Shown here one piece after another: positions 23,901 through 64,000 of a DNA stretch of 64,000 bases (the stretch's first letter is position 1; every line of letters starts with the position of its first letter). Made by a program: the position numbers and the translations under genes. Below the pieces are notes generated by a model that was not told the DNA's origin, did not search any database, and worked only from the letters and a program-made list of their open reading frames with translations. Source of the stretch: Antechinus flavipes (taxonomy: Eukaryota); assembly GCF_016432865.1 (NCBI RefSeq), contig NC_067398.1, positions 83,390,001 through 83,454,000 on the forward strand, given 5' to 3'.

Positions 23901-24249
23901 AGGAACAGGTTCCTGAGAGGAAATGGGGGAGAGGGAGGGGTCTGCCCTCTGGACCTCAGTTTTCTCCTTTGAGCAGGGAATTGGGGATAAGACCCTCTAT
24001 CCCAGCAGCTCCTCTCCCTCTTCCCTTGCTAATCCCACCCTCCCCCAGCTCCGAGACCAGGTGGCCACCAGCCTCCTCCCCCAGCCCAGTCAGGCATTCC
24101 CTGGACAGAGGCCTGTTGTCTTAGCAACGAAGGCTTTCAGTCAAAGCCCCAGCCCCCGGGGGGAGTCTGTGGGGCCCTCTGGGAGGAAGGGACCAAGCTG
24201 TTACCCACCCTCCCTCCTCTCCATCCCAGTGCTTTAAGATGTGATGAGG

Positions 24250-26830
24250 GCCTGGGGGCATCTAGGCAAGGATCCCACCTGGCACGACCGGATGGGGCCT
24301 GGGGTTCAGGGATCAGCCAGGGCTTGAACTCCAGGGCCGCGTCCCGGGGAATTCGGGGGCTAGGGGAGGAGGGACCCGGACCAGCTGCTGGGACGGGGTT
24401 ATTGTTGGTGGATCTGTAACCCTGGGGCCCCTAGGAGGCCAGGCCAGTGCCCAGGAGCTGAAAACTGCCCTCTTGTCAAGGAAAGGGGGAGATCAGCCAC
24501 AGGGCGTTGTTTTAGGGGAGGAGAAGAGAGATCACCGAAGGTCCAGGATGGACCGGCTTATCGCCTCTATCTGCGCTCCCACCCCCGCCCTCGCCTCTAC
24601 TCGCACCCTTTCCGTGGTTAGTTTCTGCCTGTCTCTTTAAAGCGATAGAAGCGCCTCGGCAGGAGCCGGGCCATACCATTTGCTTCACGGAGGAGGGGGA
24701 GACGGAGTTAAGACTCCCCACTCCGCGGAAGGGCGGCGGGGGGACGCCTTGCCCCACGAAGCATTTTCACGTTCCCAAGTAAGAAGAAGTGCCTTTCCTT
24801 CCAGGAAACCGGGGAGTTTCCTCGACAGTGGTCTTTTTCCAACTTGGCAGCCCGAAAAATCCTTCCCCACCTGGCTCCCTGCAGACTGCCCTGGTCCCGC
24901 CCTCCCTCTGATCTTTTAAAGGGGCCGCGCCGGGCCGAGGGGGTGGGGCCGTGGGAGGAAAAGTTGGAACGTTTGCGAACAACCGAGTGCGGGCTCGGGG
25001 CTCCGGGGCTTGAGGCTTTGGGTGCCGGTGACCATGGGGGTGGCTCGGGCCCTCGGTGCGAGGTGAGTGAGTGCCGGCGGCTCTTCGCCCCCAGATTCTC
25101 CCGGGGGATCTGCGCCCCTAGCCTCGGCACCGGTGCCGGCCGCCCCTCGCGCCCGCCGCGGGAGCCTGGCCCGCTCCGGGTTCCCAGCCGGGGCCAGGCG
25201 GGCGCGGGACCCACGTGCGGCTGGGGGCGGGGGACTGGGGACCAAGCCGCCAACAAAGGGGGCTTGTTCTGCCGCGAGGGGCCCCGGGCGGGGAAGCGGG
25301 GAGCCGGAGCACACGGGCCGGAGAGGGGAGCTGGGGCGGCCGGAGCCGTGGCCTTGGCCGCGGCGGAGTCAGCATTCCGGGAGCGCTGGCTGGAAGGGAG
25401 CCCTGCCCTGCCCTGCCCTGCCCTGCCCCAGCCCAGCCGGCAGCCGCTCCCCACCGTGGGAGGTCCAGATCGCTCCGGCCGGGACTCTCTCCTGGCCGGT
25501 CTCGGAGCTGCCTTTGTTCTTCCCTGGAGTAGCTGAGGCTGAGCGGTCTGCGAAGGAAGAGTTGGTAGATTGGGGTTGCAGGGGACCCGAGGCCCATCCA
25601 ATCTCTCCATCTTACACGGACGGAAAGTGAATCGAGGTGCCCTAACCAGAGAGTTGAGGAACTTCCTAATAGATAAAATTAGAATGGGCTTTAAAAGTCC
25701 CGCATAACTAAGTCGGGGTGGGAAGGAGTGGAAACTGCCTTGGGAAACTCCAGAGCGTCCCCGGAGACCACTAATGCCCTCCTCTCCCACTTCCTAGCAG
25801 GTCCTGAGCCAGCCCTGCAGCTTGCGACAAGAGCCCCCCATGATGTGGGCAGCGGCCCCGACGGCCCTGGCCCTGACCCTCCTGGTGTCGCTGGTCTCGG
25901 CGGGGCCCAGAATCGAAGAGCCAAAGCCTACCGCCCCACCCATCTTTACCCGGCGCCCCTTCCTGGTGGCGTGGAACGCCCCAACCCAGGACTGCGCGCC
26001 AAGGTTCAAGGTAGAGCTCGACTTATCCGTCTTTGATATTCGAGCGTCACCTAACGAAGGCTTCGTGAAGCAGAATCTCACCATTTTCTATCGAAATCGC
26101 CTGGGCTACTACCCTTACTATGACTCGCACCTGCGACCGGTCCATGGGGGCGTGCCTCAGAATAGTAGCCTGATCGACCACCTGGAGCACTTGCCCGAAG
26201 GGGTTCGGCACTATATCCGGTCACCCGACCGAGAGGGTCTGGCCGTCATTGACTGGGAGGACTGGCGCCCAGTCTGGATCAGGAACTGGCAGAGCAAGGA
26301 TGTGTACCGCCAGGTCTCCCGCCAACTCGTCAGTTCCCGACACCCCACCTGGACCCCGGAGCAGGTGGCCAAGCAAGCTCAGTACGAGTTTGAGTTCGCT
26401 GCCCGGCAGTTCATGCTGGAGACGCTGCGATGGGCGAAGGAAACGCGCCCCCGCCAGCTCTGGGGCTTCTACCTCTTCCCTGACTGTTACAACCACGACT
26501 ACGTGCAGAATTGGTCCAGCTACACAGGCCGCTGCCCAGATGTTGAGGTCTCCAGAAATGACCAGCTGGCCTGGCTCTGGGCAGAGAGCACTGCCCTCTA
26601 CCCTTCCATTTACCTGGACCCCATGCTAAAGTCCTCCTCCAATGGTCGCAAGTTTGTGCGCTATCGCGTGGGGGAAGCCCTGAGGGTGGCCCGGGAGCAC
26701 CACGCCGACTACTCCCTCCCAGTCTTCGTCTATATGCGCCCCACCTACACCCAGAACTTCACGGTGCTCAGCGAGGTAACCGGCTGCCAGAGCTAGGGGG
26801 CAGCGGCGGGCTTAGCCCCGGGGAGCCACA
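24250..26830 (+). promoter_or_regulatory. HYAL2 CpG island with a probable non-coding first exon ending at 25062 (GAG|GTGAGT)
   Basis: CpG/GC-rich with GC boxes; consensus donor at 25062/25063; tandem acceptor TAG/CAG ending at 25800. Confidence 0.75.
25840..26775 (+). CDS. HYAL2: Hyaluronidase-2 first coding exon (signal peptide, GH56 domain with AVIDWEDWRP)
   Basis: ATG at 25840 (the ORF track starts earlier at a TTG); KPTAPPIFT.RPF, DWEDWRPVW, WGFYLFPDCYNHDYVQNW; donor GAG|GTAAC at 26775. Confidence 0.97.
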
Positions 26831-27460
26831 GGTCAGGGAGGCCGGAGACCTGGGAACAGAGGCATCCCTTGGGCCTGCAAGGTCCAACTCCTCATTTTAC
26901 AGATGGGGAGACCGAGGCCCTGAAGGGAGGCGGGATCACAGAGACTTGTAGAAGTAAAGTAGAAAGAACCATTTGGCCGGTGAGAGGGGGAGGAGTTGCG
27001 AGCTTAGAGAGGGGCCTGCGCTGTCCCCAGGAGGCCAGACTAAGCCTAGGACTTGGTGGCTCCCAGGGCAGGAGCCTGCCCACCTGGCTCCACAGCCCTC
27101 AGGCCCCGTTGCCCAAGGCAGGAGGTCTGAGTTCGGAGAGCCTTGCTGATGTCCCTGCCTTAGAATTTCAAGAGTGGGAAGTTGATTAAACCCCTTGTAG
27201 GAGGGGGTAGCTGGCAGAAATTTTTCTTTTCTCCCTTCCTCATATAGAACGTCTGGAGGGGATAGAGAGCCGGCCTGGACTTGTCTGACATGGGCTATTC
27301 TCCCTGCCTCTGATCTGAAGCTTGAAACCCTGCCCAGACAAGCCTGAGGAGACAGGCAGAGGTTCCAGGAGGCAGAAGAAAGAAAGGGAGCAGCCCCTCT
27401 GTTTGTCTCACACCCCCTCCCCTCGCCTGCAGTTCTGACCTGTCCTCTTTCTTCTCCTAG

Positions 27461-27550
27461 ATGGACCTCGTCTCCACTATTGGGGAGAGTGCAGCTCTGG
27501 GGGCAGCCGGAGTCATCATCTGGGGAGATGCAGATTATACCAAGGGCCCG
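27461..27550 (+). CDS. HYAL2: HYAL2 90-nt coding exon (MDLVSTIGESAALGAAGVIIWGDADYTKGP)
   Basis: TAG acceptor, CCG|GTAAGT donor; conserved 30-aa hyaluronidase exon. Confidence 0.97.
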
Positions 27551-29625
27551 GTAAGTGGAGCCATGGGGCCTAAGGGTCTAGGTATGGACTGGCCTAACCA
27601 AAAGCCCTACTTCCCCCAACAAAGGAGGAGGAATTTAATATATGGGGAAACAGATTCATCGAGGGGAAGGGGCTTGCCCAAGTTAACCCAGTGACTAAAT
27701 GGCAAACCTAAGATTCAAATCTAGGTTTCCTGATTCAATCTAAAGCTCTTTCCGTAGTCTGAAGGAGAAAAGCCATATACCAAAAAAAAAAAAAAAAAAA
27801 AAACCAAATGAAATAAAATAAAAACCACATCCCATAGATAAACAAGCCTTGGCTGGGATGCAAGGGCAGTGTGATTGCCCACACAGTCAAGAAAGGCTTC
27901 TCAGAAGTTGAGTTGCAGTCCTAAGTTACCAGAAAATAGGAAGAAGGGCAGGAACTTTGTTCCCGTCATCGTTGGGGTGTTGAAATTAGCAGAGAGTGGC
28001 AGTGCTGGGAGGGGCATAGATTCACCGGATTTTGAAGGTGGAAGGGACCGTCTAGCCCAAACAGCAGAAACCATGCTCAGAAAATGAGCCCCCCCCCCCC
28101 CCTTACACCACACAGGACAGTCCCTCAGAGCCCTCCAGGGATGTGGGTGACATCCCACTCCTTCCCAAGATATCTCATTCCACTAAGGGAGAAGTGGGGA
28201 TGGTGGTAGTTTTCTAACATCAAGTCTAAATTTTACTCATTTTCTAGGACCAAACCAAACAAATCAGAGCTCTATAAGTGCTTAAAGATAAAGTATCAAA
28301 GGCAAAGGGGCTCTTAGAATGCAGAAGCTAGATGAGAGCTAGGAGGCCCCTTAGAATGTAAAGGAAGAATGTTATTGCTGGGAGGGCTCTTAGAACACAG
28401 ACTGTCAGAGCTGGGAAGGACTTTAGAATTAGGAGCAGGATTCGGTGGAGCCCTAAAATCCAAACTATTCCTTTTACAGGGGGCAATCTAAGACTGAGAA
28501 ATTCATATTAAGTTCCTTGTCCCATCCCTGGTTTAGTAGTTAGTTCCGTGATCTCACAAACATACCGCTTTTTGTTGCCTTTTGCTCCCTGTTCTCCCCC
28601 ATTTTCCTCTGAACTTGCATTTAAAGGAAAGGGGAAACGTGTCTTTGTTCCAGCAGCTGCTCCTAGCGTCTCTCCCCACCCCTCCGCCTGTCTTGAGTGC
28701 CTCCCCAGCCAGGAAAGGGGTGGGGATGGGAGCCTGGAGGAATAGGATCCGGCCTCAGAATCCCTACCCCCTTCACCATTGTCCCTCTTTCTGGGGCGAT
28801 TGAGTACATACACAACAGAGCACAGGGCAGACTCTTAGAGAGCTGCCTACAAACAAAGAGTCCAAGGAAAGGGGTCCTAGCAGAGGCGATTTCCCTCGCT
28901 GCCTACTCCCGGTCCTCCAGCCAGCTTTGAGACAAATGGGTTTCTTTCCACTTTTCATTGGAGGGTGGGGGATTTGGCTGTAACCTCCCATACCCACCCA
29001 TCTATGCCCAATTCCCTGCCCTAGTTGGTATTTTCTCTAAGACCTCACACAAGGATCCCACAGAGATCAGCAGAGGCCCAAACCCCACGTTCAACCTATC
29101 AGGCTCCCATTGGTCAGAGCCTCCTTTGGGGCTCCAGAGAGCCTTGCCCCTAAAGAGCTTTGTCTGATGCAGAAAGCAGGAAGATCCAAGAGAGACTGAA
29201 ATAGATGAGATACTTTGAGAGGGAAGGTTCCACTTTCCCAGGTCCTGTAAGACTATCTCAGGAAAGAGGAGGTAGTGGGGTCCAAGTTGGAGTTGGAGGG
29301 AGGGAGGGGCTTCAGCATGGAGTATGGGATGTTCATTCCAGGTCCTAAGAACCACACTTAACAGAGGTACAGATGAGGAGGTGGGAGGTGACTCAATGCT
29401 CATGAGGATGCTCAGATGCTCAGTCACTCCATGTGGCTCCCGGCTCCCCAGGGAGAAAGGCCACAGGGTCTGATGGGAAGGAGGTTAAGTCTGGGACCAG
29501 AATTCAAATCCTGACTCAAGTCCAGACTCAGCTGGTTGGCCTGATCCAGTCATTTCCTTCTCTCAAGTGCATGGTGACTGTGAGAAATGAATGCTTTGCC
29601 CTGACCTGCTCTACCTTCCCTTCAG

Positions 29626-30030
29626 GAAACCTGCCAGAAAATCAAGGAGTACCTGGAAAGCCGCCTGGCCCCTTACGTGGTGAACGTCTCGGAGGCTGCT
29701 TTCCGCTGCAGTGAGGACCTGTGCCACGGGCACGGGCGCTGCCAACGACGGGTGTCCAACTCCAATGCCTTCCTGCACCTGAACCCCCGGAGCTTTCGCC
29801 TTCGTCCCGCTCAGAGTCCCAAGGAGCCCCTCTTCCGGGCTGAGGGCGAGTTCAGCCAGGCTGACCTGGCCCAGCTCCAGGACAACTTCCATTGCCAGTG
29901 CTACCAGGGCTGGCATGGGGAGAGCTGCCAGCACAGCCGCAAAGCCCCAAACAGAGGCTCTGCCAGGGGCCCATCGGGCCTGGTAGCCCTGCTGGCCCTG
30001 GGCCACTTAGTCCTCCTCCGACTGCCGTAG
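29626..30030 (+). CDS. HYAL2: HYAL2 last coding exon (EGF-like domain and hydrophobic GPI-signal-like tail); total 476 aa
   Basis: ETCQKIKEY..., CHGHGRC, CQCYQGWHGESC, tail LVALLALGHLVLLRLP*, TAG at 30028-30030. Confidence 0.97.
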   Translation, partial: ETCQKIKEYLESRLAPYVVNVSEAAFRCSEDLCHGHGRCQRRVSNSNAFLHLNPRSFRLRPAQSPKEPLFRAEGEFSQADLAQLQDNFHCQCYQGWHGESCQHSRKAPNRGSARGPSGLVALLALGHLVLLRLP

Positions 30031-41265: not shown

Positions 41266-41464
41266 NNNNNNNNNNNNNNNNNNNNNNNNNNNNNNNNNNN
41301 NNNNNNNNNNNNNNNNNNNNNNNNNNNNNNNNNNNNNNNNNNNNNNNNNNNNNNNNNNNNNNNNNNNNNNNNNNNNNNNNNNNNNNNNNNNNNNNNNNNN
41401 NNNNNNNNNNNNNNNNNNNNNNNNNNNNNNNNNNNNNNNNNNNNNNNNNNNNNNNNNNNNNNNN
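41266..41464. other. Assembly gap (199 N) next to a GA-rich simple repeat (41465-41665)
   Basis: Run of N. Confidence 0.99.
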
Positions 41465-51108: not shown

Positions 51109-51290
51109 NNNNNNNNNNNNNNNNNNNNNNNNNNNNNNNNNNNNNNNNNNNNNNNNNNNNNNNNNNNNNNNNNNNNNNNNNNNNNNNNNNNNNNNNNNNN
51201 NNNNNNNNNNNNNNNNNNNNNNNNNNNNNNNNNNNNNNNNNNNNNNNNNNNNNNNNNNNNNNNNNNNNNNNNNNNNNNNNNNNNNNNNNN
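51109..51290. other. Assembly gap (182 N)
   Basis: Run of N. Confidence 0.99.
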
Positions 51291-53509: not shown

Positions 53510-53874
53510 NNNNNNNNNNNNNNNNNNNNNNNNNNNNNNNNNNNNNNNNNNNNNNNNNNNNNNNNNNNNNNNNNNNNNNNNNNNNNNNNNNNNNNNNNNN
53601 NNNNNNNNNNNNNNNNNNNNNNNNNNNNNNNNNNNNNNNNNNNNNNNNNNNNNNNNNNNNNNNNNNNNNNNNNNNNNNNNNNNNNNNNNNNNNNNNNNNN
53701 NNNNNNNNNNNNNNNNNNNNNNNNNNNNNNNNNNNNNNNNNNNNNNNNNNNNNNNNNNNNNNNNNNNNNNNNNNNNNNNNNNNNNNNNNNNNNNNNNNNN
53801 NNNNNNNNNNNNNNNNNNNNNNNNNNNNNNNNNNNNNNNNNNNNNNNNNNNNNNNNNNNNNNNNNNNNNNNNNN
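53510..53874. other. Assembly gap (365 N)
   Basis: Run of N. Confidence 0.99.
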
Positions 53875-57001: not shown

Positions 57002-57916
57002 ATGGTTCTGAATACCTTCTCCGTGGGGCTACCACATCTATACGCTCTCCTGCTGTGTCTGCCCACCCCGGGCCAGAGCATCGTGGCTCCTGTGGTCCCC
57101 GATGTCCCCTTTGCTGCCATCTGGAATGTTGGCACCAATTTCTGCCAGAAAAAATTTCAAATCAACATTGATCTGGAAACCTTTGATATCGTGGCCAACC
57201 CGGGCCAGGCCTTCAAGGGGCCAAACATGACCATCTTCTACAGCAGTCAGCTGGGCCTTTACCCTTCCTACACATCTGACGGTCAGCCTGTTAATGGAGG
57301 CCTGCCACAGAATGCCAGCCTCAATGCTCACCTGGCCAGGGCTCGCCAGGATATCTTGGCCTCTATGCCCACACTAGGTTTCCGGGGTCTGGCAGTCATC
57401 GACTGGGAGTCCTGGCGCCCGGTGTGGGCTCGCAATGGGGGATCCAAGAACATTTACCGGGAACGCTCTCGGGAAATGGTCAGGGCTCAGCACCCGGACT
57501 GGTATTCTTGGTGGGTGGAGAGGAAAGCCATAGAGCAGTATGAGGGGGCTGCCAAAGCCTTCATGCTGGACACCTTGAAGTTGGGAGTGTCCTTGAGGCC
57601 CCAGGGGCTCTGGGGCTATTACGATTTTCCAGACTGCTACAATTACAACTTCCAGAGCCCCAACTACACAGGCCAGTGTTTACCTGGAATTGAGGACCAG
57701 AATGACGGCCTTCAGTGGATGTGGGAGGAAAGCCATGCCCTCTATCCCAGCATCTACCTGTCCCCAAAGCTGGCAGGCAACGGGCATAGCCTGCTTTATG
57801 TCCGCTCGAGAGTCCGAGAGGCCTTCCGGGTAGCAGGTAGAACCAGGAGTTCTCACCGACACATCCTGCCTTACGCTCAGATATTTTATGAGAACACAGA
57901 TCGCTTTCTGTCTTTG
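57002..57916 (+). CDS. HYAL1: Hyaluronidase-1-like gene A, first coding exon (signal peptide, GH56 domain; catalytic D134/E136 in AVIDWESWRP)
   Basis: 915 nt = 305 codons; MTIFYSSQLG, GGLPQNASL.AHLAR, WGYYDFPDCYNY, YPSIY; donor TTG|GTAAGT at 57916. Which copy is the HYAL1 orthologue is unresolved. Confidence 0.93.
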
Positions 57917-58207
57917 GTAAGTGTCTTTACCACTTCCCCCAGCCAATCAATCCCTCCCTCTGAGGCTAGAATGTGGGTCCAGTATGGAGCCATCAGAGCC
58001 CCATTGTCACTGACAGGTACCCCAGCCTCGGGCTGAGATGCCTGGGAAAGCTAGATTTTATTTATTCCCTTCTCACTCCCATGAAGCCCAGTAAGTAATG
58101 TTGGTGTGATCTGCTAATTTCACCCAGACCCAGGACTCCATGGCAGCTCTGCTCCCCCATCCCTATTGACCCCGTAATCCCCTCAGCTCTGGGTTTGTTC
58201 TCTGCAG

Positions 58208-58297
58208 GAGGACCTGGAGAGCAGCATTGGAGAGAGTGCAGCCCAGGGAACAGATGGAATCGTGCTGTGGATCGGCTGGTCGAACTACAACAGCAAA
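58208..58297 (+). CDS. HYAL1: HYAL1-like A 90-nt exon (EDLESSIGESAAQGTDGIVLWIGWSNYNSK)
   Basis: CAG acceptor, AAA|GTGAGG donor; GESAAQG and VLW..W are HYAL1-type. Confidence 0.94.
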
Positions 58298-58914
58298 GTG
58301 AGGAAGGCCTGAGGCTTGGGAGGAGGGACCTTGAATAAGGCCTGGGGACTGATATCTAGGGGGAGGATCAGTGGAAACAAGAAGGCATTTTCAACTCTGC
58401 CCAAATTCTTATGGGTACTAGGCATCCAGGGAAAGTGGGGGGGGGGAGGGGGAAAGGGAGGAGTTTCCCCTCAATACTGTACCTCTATCAACCTGTCACA
58501 GAGGCCTGATATTCCTCCATTAGAGCTCCAAGTTAAGGGGCAAAGATTTATTTCGATGCTGAGAGGCAGCTAATTTGGAAAGGAATTTAGCCAAGAACTA
58601 GAAGCAAGAAGATAATTTTATTGGAAAGACAAAGATCAGATTCAGTAGTTTTATGACTAAAGGTACAATTGAAGATGGTGGGGCAGGAGGGATTGAAATG
58701 CATTGAATTGAGGTGGAAAGCTCCTATCATTGAATTTTATGGCTTACTGATCAATAGATGGTCCTCTGATAGCCATTTGTTTGTGACACTCCCCAAGGCT
58801 GGGTAACCTTAGGGTTTCTCAGAAATTGCATAATTCCCCTGGAAGGTCCATTTCATCATCTCTAAATCTACTCACATAAGATTGGCACTGAAGCCATCCT
58901 CTCTTTGTTCACAG

Positions 58915-59241
58915 AAATCGTGCCAGGCTATCAAGGATTACATGGACACCACCTTGGGCCCTTTCCTCCTGAATGTGACTAGCAGTGCCCACCTCTGTAG
59001 CCAGGCTCTGTGCTCAGGACATGGGCGCTGTAGCCGCCGCCCAGATCACCCCCAAGCCTTCCTCTTCCTCAACCCCTCCAGCTTCTCTCTCCGGCACCAG
59101 CCAACCAGTGGGCGTCTGGGAGTAGAGGGCATCTTGACACATGACGCCAGAGCCAGGATGGCCAGTGAGTTTGAATGCCGATGCTACACAGGCTGGAATG
59201 GAGAACAATGTGAACTCCAGGATGACTCTCCCTCTCCTTAA
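58915..59241 (+). CDS. HYAL1: HYAL1-like A last exon (EGF-like domain, no GPI tail); total 443 aa
   Basis: SCQAIKDYMDTTLGPF.LNVTS, CSQALCSGHGRC, CRCYTGWNGEQC; TAA at 59239-59241. Confidence 0.95.
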   Translation, partial: KSCQAIKDYMDTTLGPFLLNVTSSAHLCSQALCSGHGRCSRRPDHPQAFLFLNPSSFSLRHQPTSGRLGVEGILTHDARARMASEFECRCYTGWNGEQCELQDDSPSP

Positions 59242-59270
59242 TGTAGAAACTAACATCAGCAGGGTGAGAT

Positions 59271-60352
59271 TGATGCAATGGGACTCTGTCCCCTGATCTT
59301 TGGGGGGGTGGGGGTGGACCTGTTACGCCACAGTTCTCTTTAACTGTCCTGACTCAGTTTCCCTGTACTAGTTTCCCTTGTCTCAGTATCTTTAACTGTT
59401 CTTTGTCAATCCCCTAAGCTGTAAACCGCCACCCCCCCCCGCCCCCCGGTTCATTACTGAGGACCAATTACTCTAAGGTTATAAATTGTTAGCCCAAGCA
59501 AGATAAACAAGAGAGTAGGCCTTCTGACTCTTTTCTGTCCTCAAGAATTTACAATATCCCTCTAAAATATTCCAAGATATTTCACTGACATCTTTATCTC
59601 TGTGTATTCAGACATCCTGTCTCTGGGTTTTTTGGGGTTTATGGCCTCTTCCATCCTGACAGTTTTCCTGCGCTTCTCACCCCTTCCTTTGTTCAGAGAA
59701 AAGGTATTTAAGAAGTTGGGGTTCCTCCATTCATTGCTGGAGGATGGCGGCTGGTGGCTGCATGATGGACGCTGGATTCTTTGAGATGACAGTCTCCTCC
59801 AGCCCTGGGACCAACATGGATTCCTTGGTTCCAGTATATCTTTATCTCTGTCTGACTGGATAATTTGAGACGAGAGTCCTGGCCAGTCAATCTTACTCTC
59901 CCATTAATAAAATATTAAAAACTCTCTAATCTCTCTCCTGCCTCAGTTTCTCCGGCATTACAGGCCTGGGTTAGAAAAACCCTGAATCTCAACTCCTCCT
60001 GGCCTCTGGGAAAATTCCTAAAATGATCACCACCCTTCAGTCCTGATTCCCATGGGAAAATCCCATGGGAAAATCTGGGAATCAGTTTGGTCTGGAAAAC
60101 AATAGCCATCCTTTATTGATTTGGAAATTAGTCACCCTAACCCTAAACCATAGAAAGCTACATAAAATCAAAACATTGTAACCCAAACTTTGCTACCTTT
60201 CTAATCAGGAAAAGGCCCATTGAGAGAGCTGCTCAGTGAAAATAAACCTATTTTTACCAAACCTTGCTTGGAGACTGGGACTGCGAATTCTTAAAACCTG
60301 CAACATTGGCCTGGGGACCCCCATCGATGTTAGGGTATCTCACCTTTCAACA
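59271..60352 (+). mobile_element. Older solo LTR in the HYAL1-like A 3' UTR, interrupted by a younger LTR
   Basis: TG...CA ends; perfect 4-bp TSD AGAT (59267-59270 and 60353-60356); AATAAA at 60241-60246. Confidence 0.82.
59321..59962 (+). mobile_element. Younger solo LTR nested in 59271-60352
   Basis: TGTTAC...CATTACA ends; TSD GACC/GGCC (the uninterrupted family copy reads gacctgggtta); AATAAA at 59906-59911. Confidence 0.85.
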
Positions 60353-60769
60353 AGATGAAGTCAATGACATATGAAATTACAATCATAGATACATGTGATC
60401 CCATTTATAGATGCAAACACTAATAATCAATCAAATGTGTATGGCATGCCAGCCACTCTAGAAATAAAGGAAAAGCAAGATTCCCTGCCCTCCCAGAGCT
60501 GGAAACAGACTGGGATATTCCAAGAGTTTAAGCTTTCGAAGCCTTTTCCCATATAGTTTCTATTTCAAAACTGGGCACAAGGAGAAGCTCAGTAAATACT
60601 GCACTTTCTAAATGAATGAATGAATCCATATGTAAAGTTAGCCAGAACTAACCAAATTTACATCTGGTCACTGCTGTACAAAAGCATCCAGAAATACTCA
60701 CATCACTTCTAACGCACTCACACATACACACGTGACAGACAGAGGAGGCAAAGAAGGCAGAACCGGGAG

Positions 60770-61810
60770 CGGGGTGATCCCTAGAGGTGGCCGGTCCCAG
60801 CTGAGGAAAGGGACTTTTCGAGGTCACACAGTGGGCTCAGGGAGAGCTGGTTAGCCAGGCTTCAGACTCTGGGTACGGAAATCTTTTCGGTGGAAAACCC
60901 TGCCGCACCCACCCCCATCCAGTAGTCCCGCAAGCTCAGTCACCCACTTAGTCAATGACACGGCATAATCATGCTCACAGATCCATCCTGGGAATGGGGG
61001 AAGGGCCTCCCCATCTCCCTTGTCCCCCACCCATCTACTCTCGGGGCGTTTTCTCAGCCCCTTCGTGCTTCGGGCTACAATAAAACTAACGATGCCGAAG
61101 GACTAGTACTTTATGTTGGAGTGGTAGCTGCGATCCCAAACCCGAGCGTCCAGAGTGGGACAGATGGAGGGGTTAGATTTGAGTTCAGGCTAATCCCAAC
61201 TTGCCTCTCCTCTCCTCTCCTGCTTGGGCACCGAGATGCTATCCCTCCACCCCCAACCCCTCCTGGGAGGAGTGTGCTGTGTTGACTGCCCCGGGGGGAG
61301 CACAGGGCCCCTCTTCTTTCCCCATCCTCCCATTGGAAACAGGTGTGTGGTTGCCTCCTCGGAGGGGAGGAGTCCCGGACCCCTCCACCCCGCAATTGGG
61401 AATACAGGTTTGTGCTGGCCTTCCCAGAGGTGGGGAGGACAGTTCCGGACTTCCTCCTCCTCCGGCGGTGGGGGAAAAGACCAGTCACTCAAAGGTCTTC
61501 ACTTCTCCCGGCCGCGTCTACTCGGGTCCCGGCTTCCAGTTCGGCCTCGGGACAGAGAGCTGGCCTTTGTGGGGGTGGAGGGAGGGAGAAGCGTAAAGCA
61601 TTAAAGTCTGGGCCAAGGAAGGAACAGTTCCCTGTCGGGACTACTCGCCCGAGGGTTTTCTGTAAGGGTTTGCACGGGAATCAGCCGCTTCGCTTTCATC
61701 CCGAGGGCTGCTGGCCCTGTAAAAGATTACGGCAGGGGGACCTGCACAGTGGCGGTAAGTTTTCGGATCTCCACATCGGCCACAGCTCATTCTCCTGTCC
61801 TACCTCGTCT
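60770..61810 (+). promoter_or_regulatory. CpG-rich island with a strong donor GCG|GTAAGT at 61754/61755 (probable non-coding first exon)
   Basis: CpG retention, ETS-like and NF-kB-like (gggacttttc, 60810) motifs; nearest strong acceptor at 63590. Confidence 0.65.
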
Positions 61811-62758
61811 CCGAAACCTTATTCTCCCATTTCCCCGCCCCCAAAGTCTCCCTTATTTCCCTATTCTTCCAATCCCACCATTTAAGCCTGCCACTTCACT
61901 CCCCTGTCCCAGCATCCTCCTGGATTCTCCCTTCTCTTTCTGCTCCGCTTCCCTCCTCCTCTGGACGCCTGACCATCTCTTTCGTGTTCTCAGAACCCCA
62001 TTCTTTTCCCTAAAGCACAACTCTAACCATGTCATGTCCACTTCGATTCCATAAAATCCAGTAACTCCTTATTATGACTTCCTATTCCAGGATTAAATAT
62101 TCAGTTCTTTGCCCTTCATAACCCGGCCCCTTTCTGTCATTCTAGGCTTCTTACATTTTATTTACCCCTCCGTGAATTCTGCAGTCCGGTCTCTTACTCT
62201 TCCTTATACAGTCCATCTCCCATCTCCATGCTTTGAGGTTTGCTATCTCTTCTCACCCTTCTCCTGGCTTCCCTCAAATTCCTCCAGATCCCTATTGCTT
62301 TCATCCCCACTTCCCAATTGCTAATAATGCCTTCCATCATTGATTGGCTTCCATCCACTATTCTGTATATATCCAGTACATATGCCCAATACATTCCCGA
62401 TTGTTGTATGTTGTTCTTGGTTCCCAATATGCTATGTCCCCCATTAGAATGTGAATCCGAGGACATAAAGACAAATGTCCTAAGCTTGTAGCACAATGCC
62501 TGGAGTGTAGTAGGGTTTTTTTTTTTTTTAATTGTTGTAACAACAACATGTCTGACTTTTGGGGATCTCATTTGGAGTTTTCTTGGAAGAGATAATTCAC
62601 CATGTCCTTCTCCAGCTTTTTTTACAGATGAGGAAATTGAGATAAACAGAGTTAAGTGATTTGCCTGGAGTCACATAGCTAGTAAGTGCCTGAATCTGAA
62701 TTTGAATTCAAGTCTTTTTGACTCCAGAGTTGGCACATTGTAACACCTAGTATATGGT

Positions 62759-62870
62759 ACCATTACATCACCATACTAAGTATATATATGAACTAAAGAA
62801 GCATCATCTCATCAATTCCATTGAGTTAACACCTTGTTTCAAGTATACTTCTCCAGAGTTCCAGCCCTCT
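62759..62870 (+). repeat. ~112-bp segment duplicated at 47184-47303
   Basis: See the partner feature at 47184. Confidence 0.92.
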
Positions 62871-63468
62871 ACACTTATTGACCATCCCCCAGCCTTCCTC
62901 TTCACCAGTTCTCTTAACTCCCCTCTTTATTCCCTGGTACCTCTATTCTATGGCCCCCCAAATTCCTATCTCATCCCACTGATGCTCCAACCCTCTTTTC
63001 CCCAATCCAATCCTGTCTTTCATCCTCCTGTCCTCTTATTTCTTTATTCATGTCTCTATATTCTCTTGTTCTTTGACCCCATTCTCTTATCTCCCTGTTC
63101 CCCAGTCCCTGCAATCTTGATCCCTTTGGTCTGTTTTCCTGACTCTCTACCCTATCTTCCCCATCTCTCTCTATTATCTTTTATCAGTCAAGGCAAGGAC
63201 AGATTCCATACTTCACCCTCCATATGGCTTGACTTTGTGATATCTTAGCCTCGCCTTTTCCAAATTTAGGAACATCTCCCCAGTGGCTTGATTAGACAGA
63301 TATGGTATTATCCATTCTAGTTGCTGCCTAATCCCAGAGTTTCCCTCACAAACTGTGCTCTAGTGATTGTTTAATCTGGGAGCTCTTGAGTCACTTGTTG
63401 ACCTTGCCATGGTATCTCATCCTAGGACATCCAGTCTCTGAAATAGTGAATGTTTAACCTGAGAGTCT

Positions 63469-63471
<3 letters not shown>

Positions 63472-63511
<40 letters not shown>
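63472..63511 (+). repeat. (TG)20 microsatellite
   Basis: Read directly. Confidence 0.97.
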
Positions 63512-63514
<3 letters not shown>

Positions 63515-63619
63515 ATGGACATGAGCTCCCTTCTTGATCCTGAAAGCAGAAGTTAAAACCAACTCACCCACCACTGTTCTGTCACAACAGAATCTGATCT
63601 ACTGATTCCACTATGCACC

Positions 63620-64000
63620 ATGGCTCCAGGAGGCTTCATTTTTTTCATCTGTGCCCTTTTGCTGATCTATCCAGACCTAACTCAGGGTTCAGGCGGCCCT
63701 GTGCTGCCCAACGTCCCCTTTGTTGCAATCTGGAATGCCAACACCTATTTGTGCCAACAGAAATTTCAGGTGAACATCAGCCTGGACACCTTCCATGTGA
63801 TAACCAATCCAAACCAGGTCTTTAAGGGACCAAACATGACCATCTTCTATAGCAATGAGCTGGGCCTTTATCCGTGGTATACACCCACTGGGCAGCCTAT
63901 CAATGGGGGCTTACCTCAGAATGCCAATTTTGGTGCCCACATGGCCAATTCCTATAACGACATCTTGACCACTTTGCCTGAACCTGACTTCAAGGGGGTT
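63620..64000 (+). CDS. Second hyaluronidase-1-like gene (B), first 127 codons, runs off the window
   Basis: Not in the ORF track. MAPGGFIFFICALLLIYPDLTQGSGGPVLPNVPFVAIWNANTYLCQQKFQVNISLDTFHVITNPNQVFKGPNMTIFYSNELGLYPWYTPTGQPINGGLPQNANFGAHMANSYNDILTTLPEPDFKGV, open to the window end; optimal Kozak accATGg; acceptor CAG at 63588-63590 with branch-like ctcac. Confidence 0.9.
   Translation, partial: MAPGGFIFFICALLLIYPDLTQGSGGPVLPNVPFVAIWNANTYLCQQKFQVNISLDTFHVITNPNQVFKGPNMTIFYSNELGLYPWYTPTGQPINGGLPQNANFGAHMANSYNDILTTLPEPDFKGV

What the first reader, a model, noticed from the sequence alone, without database searches (positions are those of the whole stretch)
57002..64000. Two tandem, deeply diverged HYAL1-like genes where human has one
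Seen: a complete 443-aa HYAL1-type gene (A) is followed 4.4 kb later by a second open HYAL1-type frame (B, 63620 onward) with signal peptide and intact motifs. A manual ungapped alignment of 101 mature residues gives about 62 identities, so this is not an assembly duplicate or a recent copy. A and B share features such as VPF.AIWN, CQ.KFQ.NI.L.TF, FKGPNM and GQP.NGG, while B keeps HYAL1-type WNANT, YTPTG and P.PDF.G. Knowledge: the human 3p21.3 order is HYAL2-HYAL1-NAA80/HYAL3, with one HYAL1. Inference: an old marsupial-lineage duplication that gave an extra secreted or lysosomal hyaluronidase with possible sub- or neofunctionalisation. I do not know of it being characterised.
Basis: partly seen in the sequence, partly recalled or inferred. 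Interest (0 to 1): 0.8.

Follow-up and report, generated by a model that had tools for sequence, protein, structure and literature searches.

The report
Marsupial-wide tandem duplicate of HYAL1
Marsupials carry two side-by-side copies of the hyaluronan-degrading enzyme gene HYAL1 where echidna and placental mammals have one; both copies are intact, spliced into mRNA and under purifying selection, and they are already in sequence databases but not described in the papers searched.

Summary
Gene A (57002-59241, three coding exons, 443 aa) is intact. Gene B starts at 63620, 4.4 kb downstream, and runs off the window. Its full 436-aa product is encoded just beyond the window in the same assembly (Antechinus flavipes, GCA_016432865.2).

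The gene order is HYAL2 - A - B - NAA80-like acetyltransferase - HYAL3, so B is not HYAL3. A-type and B-type genes lie in tandem in Antechinus, Sminthopsis, Macrotis, wallaby and Monodelphis. Sarcophilus, Vombatus and Gracilinanus also have proteins of both types. Echidna has a single HYAL1 in the same slot.

In a maximum-likelihood tree A and B are reciprocally monophyletic sisters (100/99). AU tests reject pairing either copy with eutherian HYAL1 (p about 0.003). The duplication therefore happened on the marsupial stem.

Both copies keep the catalytic Asp129/Glu131, the cleft tyrosines and all ten cysteines. Both have dN/dS of about 0.3-0.4 between two dasyurids. Spliced mRNA contigs for both exist in related dasyurids, with B at higher depth.

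Only the A lineage has changes at otherwise invariant cleft residues: W141G/D142G in dasyurids including this window, W141S and R134L in Gracilinanus, and E131D in wallaby.

RefSeq and UniProt already list both genes under automatic names. Interest is modest.

The parts
25840..30030 (+). HYAL2 (context gene): coding exons 25840-26775, 27461-27550 and 29626-30030, giving 476 aa with a hydrophobic C-terminal tail.
   Evidence: ORF list, tblastn, splice model. Used as outgroup in the tree.
57002..57916 (+). Gene A (HYAL1 paralogue A), coding exon 1, 305 codons. Holds the signal peptide, the DWE catalytic motif and the NGG replacement of the conserved NWD.
58208..58297 (+). Gene A coding exon 2, 30 codons.
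   Evidence: The GT..AG joint 58297->58915 is seen in an RNA contig of a related species (X4 record 13).
58915..59241 (+). Gene A coding exon 3, 108 codons plus stop, holding the EGF-like Cys-rich C-terminus. The 3' UTR extends at least to about 59313.
61316..61754 (+). Gene B 5' non-coding exon in a GC-rich stretch. Its 5' end is uncertain: contigs start between 60988 and 61657. The donor is at 61754/61755.
   Evidence: Joint 61753->63590 (GT..AG, cut +1) in one long contig in each of four RNA runs.
63591..64000 (+). Gene B (HYAL1 paralogue B) first coding exon: acceptor at 63590, ATG at 63620, 127 codons inside the window. The exon continues to 64525, followed by exons 65168-65257 and 65777-66091 beyond the window, for 436 aa in total.

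Best explanation
A and B are two functional paralogues of the lysosomal/secreted acid hyaluronidase HYAL1 (glycoside hydrolase family 56). They arose by one tandem duplication on the marsupial stem, after the split from placental mammals and before opossums and Australian marsupials diverged. Every marsupial examined has kept both, except Dromiciops, where only a B-type protein was seen. Each encodes a signal peptide, a GH56 catalytic barrel with the Asp129-Trp-Glu131 acid/base pair, and an EGF-like cysteine-rich tail, with no membrane anchor. Each most likely cleaves beta-1,4 N-acetylhexosaminide bonds of hyaluronan, and probably chondroitin sulfate, at acid pH. These points are shown: gene structure, intactness, synteny, tree position, purifying selection and spliced transcripts. 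This point is inferred: B carries the canonical, more strongly expressed HYAL1 role, while A is a weaker or tissue-restricted copy whose substrate groove is changing through loss of Trp141. That would be subfunctionalisation with possible change of substrate handling in A.
For: Structure: A is 443 aa and B is 436 aa, each with the same three coding exons. The order HYAL2-A-B-acetyltransferase-GH56 (HYAL3 position) comes from the same assembly, which is identical to the window over the overlap. Distribution: the A-B tandem pair is called in Monodelphis, Macrotis, Sminthopsis and wallaby. Both types also occur in Sarcophilus and Gracilinanus and in Vombatus. Echidna has one HYAL1 between HYAL2 and NAA80 and no extra GH56 fragment. 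Tree (LG+C20, HYAL2 outgroup): the A clade has 100/99 support, the B clade 100/100, A+B 100/99, and each includes Monodelphis. AU tests reject B+Eutheria (p 0.0030) and A+Eutheria (p 0.0024). Selection: dN/dS between Antechinus and Sminthopsis is 0.29-0.40 for both A and B, and dS between the paralogues is 1.0-1.6. Residues: D129, E131, Y202, Y247, Y286, W321, R265, N350 and ten cysteines are kept in the window's A and B. B aligns without gaps to the solved human HYAL1 structure 2PE4 over 411 residues, E 3e-180. RNA: each of four runs holds a 1.9-3.1 kb contig (depth 33-157) joining B's 5' exon to its coding exon by a GT..AG splice. A 666-nt contig (depth 8) joins A exon 2 to exon 3. Cleft changes occur only in the A lineage. 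The cleft residue list comes from PMC9686885.
Against: No enzyme assay exists for either protein. The RNA contigs come from related species at about 95% identity, not from this species, and tissues are hidden behind coded run names, so the expression difference is weak evidence. dN/dS rests on one species pair, because DNA could not be fetched for the other marsupials. A sister relation of A and B could also result from an older duplication homogenised by gene conversion on the marsupial stem. The cleft changes in A could mean decay of activity rather than a new specificity.
Confidence: 0.85

Rival explanations
1. Copy A is losing hyaluronidase activity in several marsupial lineages. It survives either as a decaying gene or as a binding or otherwise non-catalytic protein, and only B does the HYAL1 job.
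For: Only A-type proteins change residues that are invariant in the other 33 HYAL1 sequences aligned. These are W141G/D142G in all three dasyurids, W141S and R134L in Gracilinanus, and E131D (the proton donor) in wallaby. In the four runs laid, A transcripts appear only as one low-depth spliced contig and one unspliced contig.
Against: A's reading frame is intact at 439-443 aa in seven species of four orders; the Vombatus A-type entry is a 390-aa partial. dN/dS for A is 0.29-0.40, no higher than for B. The window's A keeps D129, E131, the tyrosines, W321 and all cysteines. Asp for Glu is a conservative change, and it rests on a single wallaby sequence.
Confidence: 0.2
2. The duplication is older, therian or earlier. 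A and B look like sisters only because gene conversion homogenised them on the marsupial stem, and eutherians and monotremes lost one copy.
For: Tandem paralogues of the same orientation and exon structure are prone to conversion. The tree cannot separate a stem duplication from stem homogenisation.
Against: It needs two independent losses plus a conversion event instead of one duplication. Echidna shows no GH56 remnant between HYAL1 and NAA80. No non-marsupial protein scored closer to A than eutherian HYAL1 among 915 hits, of which the top 120 were seen. There is no sign of later conversion: exon-wise DNA identity between A and B is 68-74% throughout.
Confidence: 0.05
3. B is HYAL3 or another known paralogue, or an assembly duplicate of A.
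For: In human, the gene after HYAL1 in transcription order is NAA80/HYAL3 (background knowledge).
Against: A separate HYAL3-position GH56 gene follows the acetyltransferase gene. B lies in the HYAL1 clade. A and B are only 58% identical in protein with dS above 1. The pair recurs in independent assemblies.
Confidence: 0.01

Closest known systems
Human HYAL1 (GH56 acid hyaluronidase; solved structure 2PE4)
   Same: B aligns without gaps over 411 residues to 2PE4 (E 3e-180). A and B average 56-57% identity to eutherian HYAL1. They share the three coding exons, the catalytic Asp129/Glu131, the cleft tyrosines, Trp321, five disulfide pairs, the EGF-like tail and the position next to HYAL2.
   Different: There are two genes instead of one. 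Both marsupial copies share an extra N70 sequon, and B-type proteins add N50. The window's A has Gly-Gly in place of Trp141-Asp142.
Other tandem expansions of the GH56 family (rodent Hyal5/Hyalp1 beside Spam1 in the 7q31-type cluster)
   Same: These are also lineage-specific tandem duplications inside a hyaluronidase cluster that gave intact extra enzymes (background knowledge). PMC3581078 states that the family is still evolving in several species.
   Different: Those lie in the sperm-hyaluronidase cluster and are rodent-specific. This one lies in the somatic HYAL2-HYAL1-HYAL3 cluster and is shared by marsupials from four orders. PMC3581078 does not mention marsupials.
HYAL3 and HYAL2 of the same locus
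   Same: Same family (PF01630), same strand, same cluster.
   Different: HYAL2 is about 46% identical to A and has a hydrophobic C-terminal tail. The HYAL3-position gene is about 43% identical to B's N-terminus. Neither groups with A or B (for HYAL2).

Membership tests
Glycoside hydrolase family 56 (Pfam PF01630) | Match to the family profile above the curated cut-off | tested here: met
   A-type P0001 scores 449 bits and B (P0016) 439 bits. Window A exon 1 scores 371 bits and the window B fragment 111 bits. The cut-off is 23.2.
Glycoside hydrolase family 56 (Pfam PF01630) | Catalytic Asp129-x-Glu131 (DWE) pair | tested here: met
   Present in the window's A and in B's full protein. Among all A-type sequences, wallaby alone has Asp at 131.
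HYAL1 subfamily | Falls in the HYAL1 clade, apart from HYAL2, in a rooted ML tree | tested here: met
   The mammalian HYAL1 clade has 100/99 support. A+B sit inside it as sister to Eutheria, with echidna outside. No HYAL3, HYAL4 or SPAM1 sequences were in the tree.
HYAL1 subfamily | Position between HYAL2 and NAA80/HYAL3 on the same strand | tested here: met
   Window plus L001 give HYAL2, A, B, acetyltransferase, GH56.
HYAL1 subfamily | Substrate-cleft residues Tyr75, Arg134, Trp141, Tyr202, Tyr208, Tyr247, Arg265, Tyr286, Trp321 (list from PMC9686885) | tested here: inconclusive
   B keeps all of them. The window's A keeps all except Trp141, which is Gly. The same change is present in Sarcophilus and Sminthopsis A.
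HYAL1 subfamily | Ten conserved cysteines (five disulfides, including the EGF-like domain) and the N350 glycosylation site | tested here: met
   Invariant in all A-type and B-type sequences. The residue numbering comes from my own knowledge of human HYAL1 and was checked against the DWE position.
HYAL1 subfamily | Soluble protein: signal peptide present, no GPI or hydrophobic C-terminal tail | tested here: met
   Read directly from the sequence. Both have hydrophobic N-termini aligned with the human signal peptide region, and both end 6-11 residues after the last cysteine. The window's HYAL2 has a long hydrophobic tail. No signal-peptide predictor was available.
HYAL1 subfamily | Acid-pH endo-hydrolysis of hyaluronan | not testable with these tools
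   Needs a recombinant enzyme assay.

The most novel reading that the evidence does not exclude
Copy A has taken on a new, marsupial-specific role with altered glycosaminoglycan handling. Its substrate groove has lost Trp141 at least twice independently (dasyurids and Gracilinanus) while the gene stays under purifying selection. On this reading the pair is a retained case of neofunctionalisation, possibly tied to marsupial-specific extracellular matrices, for example in reproduction or pouch-young development.
Probability: 0.2. Interest if true: 0.5.

Novelty: new member of a known kind. Interest (0 to 1): 0.3.

Why it matters
HYAL1 is the main somatic acid hyaluronidase, and its loss causes mucopolysaccharidosis IX in humans. 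A second copy kept in marsupials since before opossums and Australian marsupials diverged (dated from background knowledge, not measured here) is a natural experiment on how hyaluronan turnover can be split between two enzymes. It also matters for annotation. RefSeq names both genes 'hyaluronidase-1' in Antechinus, Sarcophilus and Monodelphis, so orthology-based transfers and expression studies can confuse them. The recurrent loss of a cleft tryptophan in only one copy gives a concrete structure-function hypothesis that can be tested. This is nonetheless an ordinary lineage-specific duplication in a family known for tandem expansion.

Tried and rejected
(1) B as HYAL3 was rejected by synteny and tree.

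(2) An assembly artefact or recent copy was rejected by 58% protein identity, dS above 1 and recurrence in other assemblies.

(3) A pre-therian duplication was rejected by AU tests and the echidna locus, apart from the conversion scenario kept as a minor rival.

(4) A third copy inside the window: tblastn finds none.

(5) Homology between B's 5' exon/promoter (60900-61800) and the region upstream of A: blastn finds nothing.

(6) The search of 50%-identity representatives was uninformative, because all mammalian HYAL1 collapse into one cluster.

(7) A systematic charge or pI difference between A and B: none found.

(8) DNA for Monodelphis, Macrotis, Vombatus and wallaby could not be fetched (files too large), and Dromiciops B was not on record. 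No multi-species codon model could therefore be run.

(9) Five literature searches found no description of the duplication (and the reading).
Full report
**What is in the window.**

tblastn of the spliced gene A protein against all 64 kb finds three GH56 loci and no others.
- HYAL2 lies at 25.8-30.0 kb.
- Gene A lies at 57002-59241.
- The start of gene B lies at 63620-64000.

Gene A has three coding exons (57002-57916, 58208-58297, 58915-59241) with canonical GT/AG borders. They encode 443 aa without interruption. The model is identical to a database protein named hyaluronidase-1 [Antechinus flavipes].

Gene B opens at an ATG at 63620 and stays open for 127 codons to the window end. The distance from A's stop to B's start is 4378 bases. 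Both stretches match Pfam Glyco_hydro_56 far above the cut-off.

**Completing gene B.**

A protein search with A returned a 436-aa protein flagged as belonging to the window's own genome (P0016). Its first 127 residues equal the window's B fragment.

Looking up its coding contig gave L001 (GCA_016432865.2, CM028217.1). L001 is identical to the window over the 8381-base overlap. B there has the same three-exon layout as A, at window-equivalent coordinates 63620-64525, 65168-65257 and 65777-66091, and it splices exactly to P0016.

Downstream of B lie a 251-aa acetyltransferase gene (the NAA80 position) and then another GH56 gene of 416 aa (the HYAL3 position). The order is therefore HYAL2 - A - B - NAA80-like - HYAL3. 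B is an extra gene and is not HYAL3. B's N-terminus is only 43% identical to that downstream gene.

**Distribution.**

A-type proteins are 69-92% identical to A. B-type proteins are 69-92% identical to B's first 127 residues. Both types occur in the following species:
- Sminthopsis
- Sarcophilus
- Macrotis
- Vombatus
- Notamacropus
- Monodelphis
- Gracilinanus

Only a B-type protein was seen for Dromiciops.

Called genes show the same tandem A-B arrangement in Monodelphis, Macrotis, Sminthopsis and wallaby.

In echidna the interval holds HYAL2, one HYAL1, NAA80 and HYAL3. tblastn with A and B finds no further GH56 fragment there.

**Phylogeny.**

The tree used 39 proteins: 6 A-type, 7 B-type, echidna, 15 eutherian and 9 sauropsid HYAL1, with the window's HYAL2 as outgroup. 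The model was LG+C20+F+G4.

| Clade | Support (ultrafast bootstrap / SH-aLRT) |
|---|---|
| A-type | 100/99 |
| B-type | 100/100 |
| A + B | 100/99 |
| Eutheria | 100/100 |

Monodelphis is sister to the Australian species within the A clade. The two opossums hold the same position within the B clade.

AU tests reject trees that unite B with Eutheria (p 0.0030) or A with Eutheria (p 0.0024).

The duplication therefore falls on the marsupial stem. It came after the split from placentals and before the opossum/Australasian divergence.

Mean protein identities agree with this:

| Comparison | Mean identity |
|---|---|
| A vs B | 61% |
| A vs Eutheria | 57% |
| B vs Eutheria | 56% |

Neither copy is clearly the slow-evolving parent. 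The stem branch lengths are 0.17 for A and 0.26 for B.

**Are both functional?**

Coding sequences of A and B were spliced from Antechinus (L001) and Sminthopsis (L003). All four are open.
- Pairwise dN/dS is 0.29-0.40 for A and 0.29-0.40 for B under three estimators. Both are under purifying selection of similar strength.
- dS between the paralogues is 1.0-1.6, which is near saturation.

B aligns without a gap to the solved human HYAL1 structure 2PE4 over 411 residues.

In an alignment of 38 HYAL1 sequences, the window's A and B keep the following:
- Asp129 and Glu131
- Arg134 and Arg265
- Tyr75, Tyr202, Tyr208, Tyr247 and Tyr286
- Trp321
- the N350 sequon
- all ten cysteines

The cleft residue list is taken from PMC9686885.

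Neither protein has a hydrophobic C-terminal tail such as the window's HYAL2 carries. Both should therefore be soluble, secreted or lysosomal enzymes. This is inferred from sequence.

**Asymmetry between the copies.**

Changes at residues that are invariant in the other 33 sequences occur only in the A lineage:
- Trp141-Asp142 to Gly-Gly in all three dasyurids, including the window
- Trp141 to Ser plus Arg134 to Leu in Gracilinanus
- Glu131 to Asp in wallaby

All B-type proteins keep these residues.

B-type proteins share an extra N50 glycosylation sequon. Antechinus B has lost the N99 sequon. There is no systematic pI difference between the copies.

**Transcription.**

Four RNA runs were laid on 58001-64000. 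They are Logan contigs from two related organisms with coded names, about 95% identical to the window.

Each run has one long contig (1.9-3.1 kb, word depth 33-157) with three features:
- It starts in a GC-rich 5' exon that begins between 60988 and 61657 in the different runs and ends at 61753/4.
- It splices GT..AG to 63590/1 and continues through B's coding exon to the window end.
- Its distal part cross-maps at 80% identity onto A's exon 3, as expected for a paralogue.

Gene A is represented by two contigs:
- a 666-nt contig (depth 8, 96% identical) that joins exon 2 to exon 3 at 58297->58915 and runs into the 3' UTR
- an unspliced contig in another run

Both genes therefore yield spliced mRNA in close relatives, with B at higher depth. 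The tool itself warns that contig depth is a poor measure of expression. Tissues are unknown. A's exon 1 lay outside the 6000-letter limit.

**Known or new.**

RefSeq and UniProt already list both genes with automatic names. Examples are two different 'hyaluronidase-1' entries in Monodelphis, Sarcophilus and Antechinus, and 'hyaluronidase-1-like' in Sminthopsis, Macrotis and Vombatus.

Full-text searches of the paper library found no paper describing a marsupial HYAL1 duplication. The main review on hyaluronidase gene evolution counts six genes from zebrafish to platypus and does not mention marsupials (PMC3581078).

I class this as a new member of a known kind: a lineage-specific tandem paralogue in a family known for such expansions.

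**Limits.**
- dN/dS rests on one species pair.
- No branch models could be run, because DNA of the other marsupials could not be fetched.
- Expression evidence is cross-species and not quantitative.
- Stem-lineage gene conversion of an older duplicate cannot be formally excluded, although it is less parsimonious.
- The N runs in the window (41266-41464, 51109-51290, 53510-53874) were left untouched. The flank for L001 was chosen so as not to reach them.

Noticed in passing
window 63613-63622: An out-of-frame ATG lies 7 bases upstream of gene B's start codon, inside the spliced 5' leader. It opens a 70-codon overlapping frame (63613-63825). B's own ATG has a strong context (A at -3, G at +4). 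This may be a translational control feature.
   Followed up: no
window 63474-63512: A (GT)n microsatellite of about 20 units lies in B's 5' intron, about 80 bases before the acceptor at 63590.
   Followed up: no
window 59200-60400 and 62600-63000: Word depths in the thousands from many short RNA contigs at 90-95% identity point to dispersed repeats (transposable elements) in the A-B spacer and in B's 5' intron.
   Followed up: no
window 24000-26000: A very GC-rich stretch (0.65) lies just upstream of and over the HYAL2 start. It is probably a CpG-island promoter. It produces many spurious long ORFs on both strands.
   Followed up: no
wallaby locus (no DNA held): In Notamacropus eugenii a further GH56 gene call of 465 aa starts only 2.8 kb after B's end. 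That is closer than HYAL3 lies in the other species. It may be a HYAL3 model with upstream exons or a third copy.
   Followed up: no
Monodelphis locus (no DNA held): A 490-aa gene with an ataxin-10 domain lies on the opposite strand between B and NAA80 in a compact 1.5-kb call. It is absent from the Antechinus, Macrotis and Vombatus loci and is possibly a retrocopy.
   Followed up: no
L001 8001-8906 (B exon 1; window 63620-64525): Antechinus B has lost the conserved N99 glycosylation sequon (NAS to NAN), which every other HYAL1 aligned keeps.
   Followed up: partly
If real, this genome's GH56 repertoire has more than one extra member.
   Followed up: no
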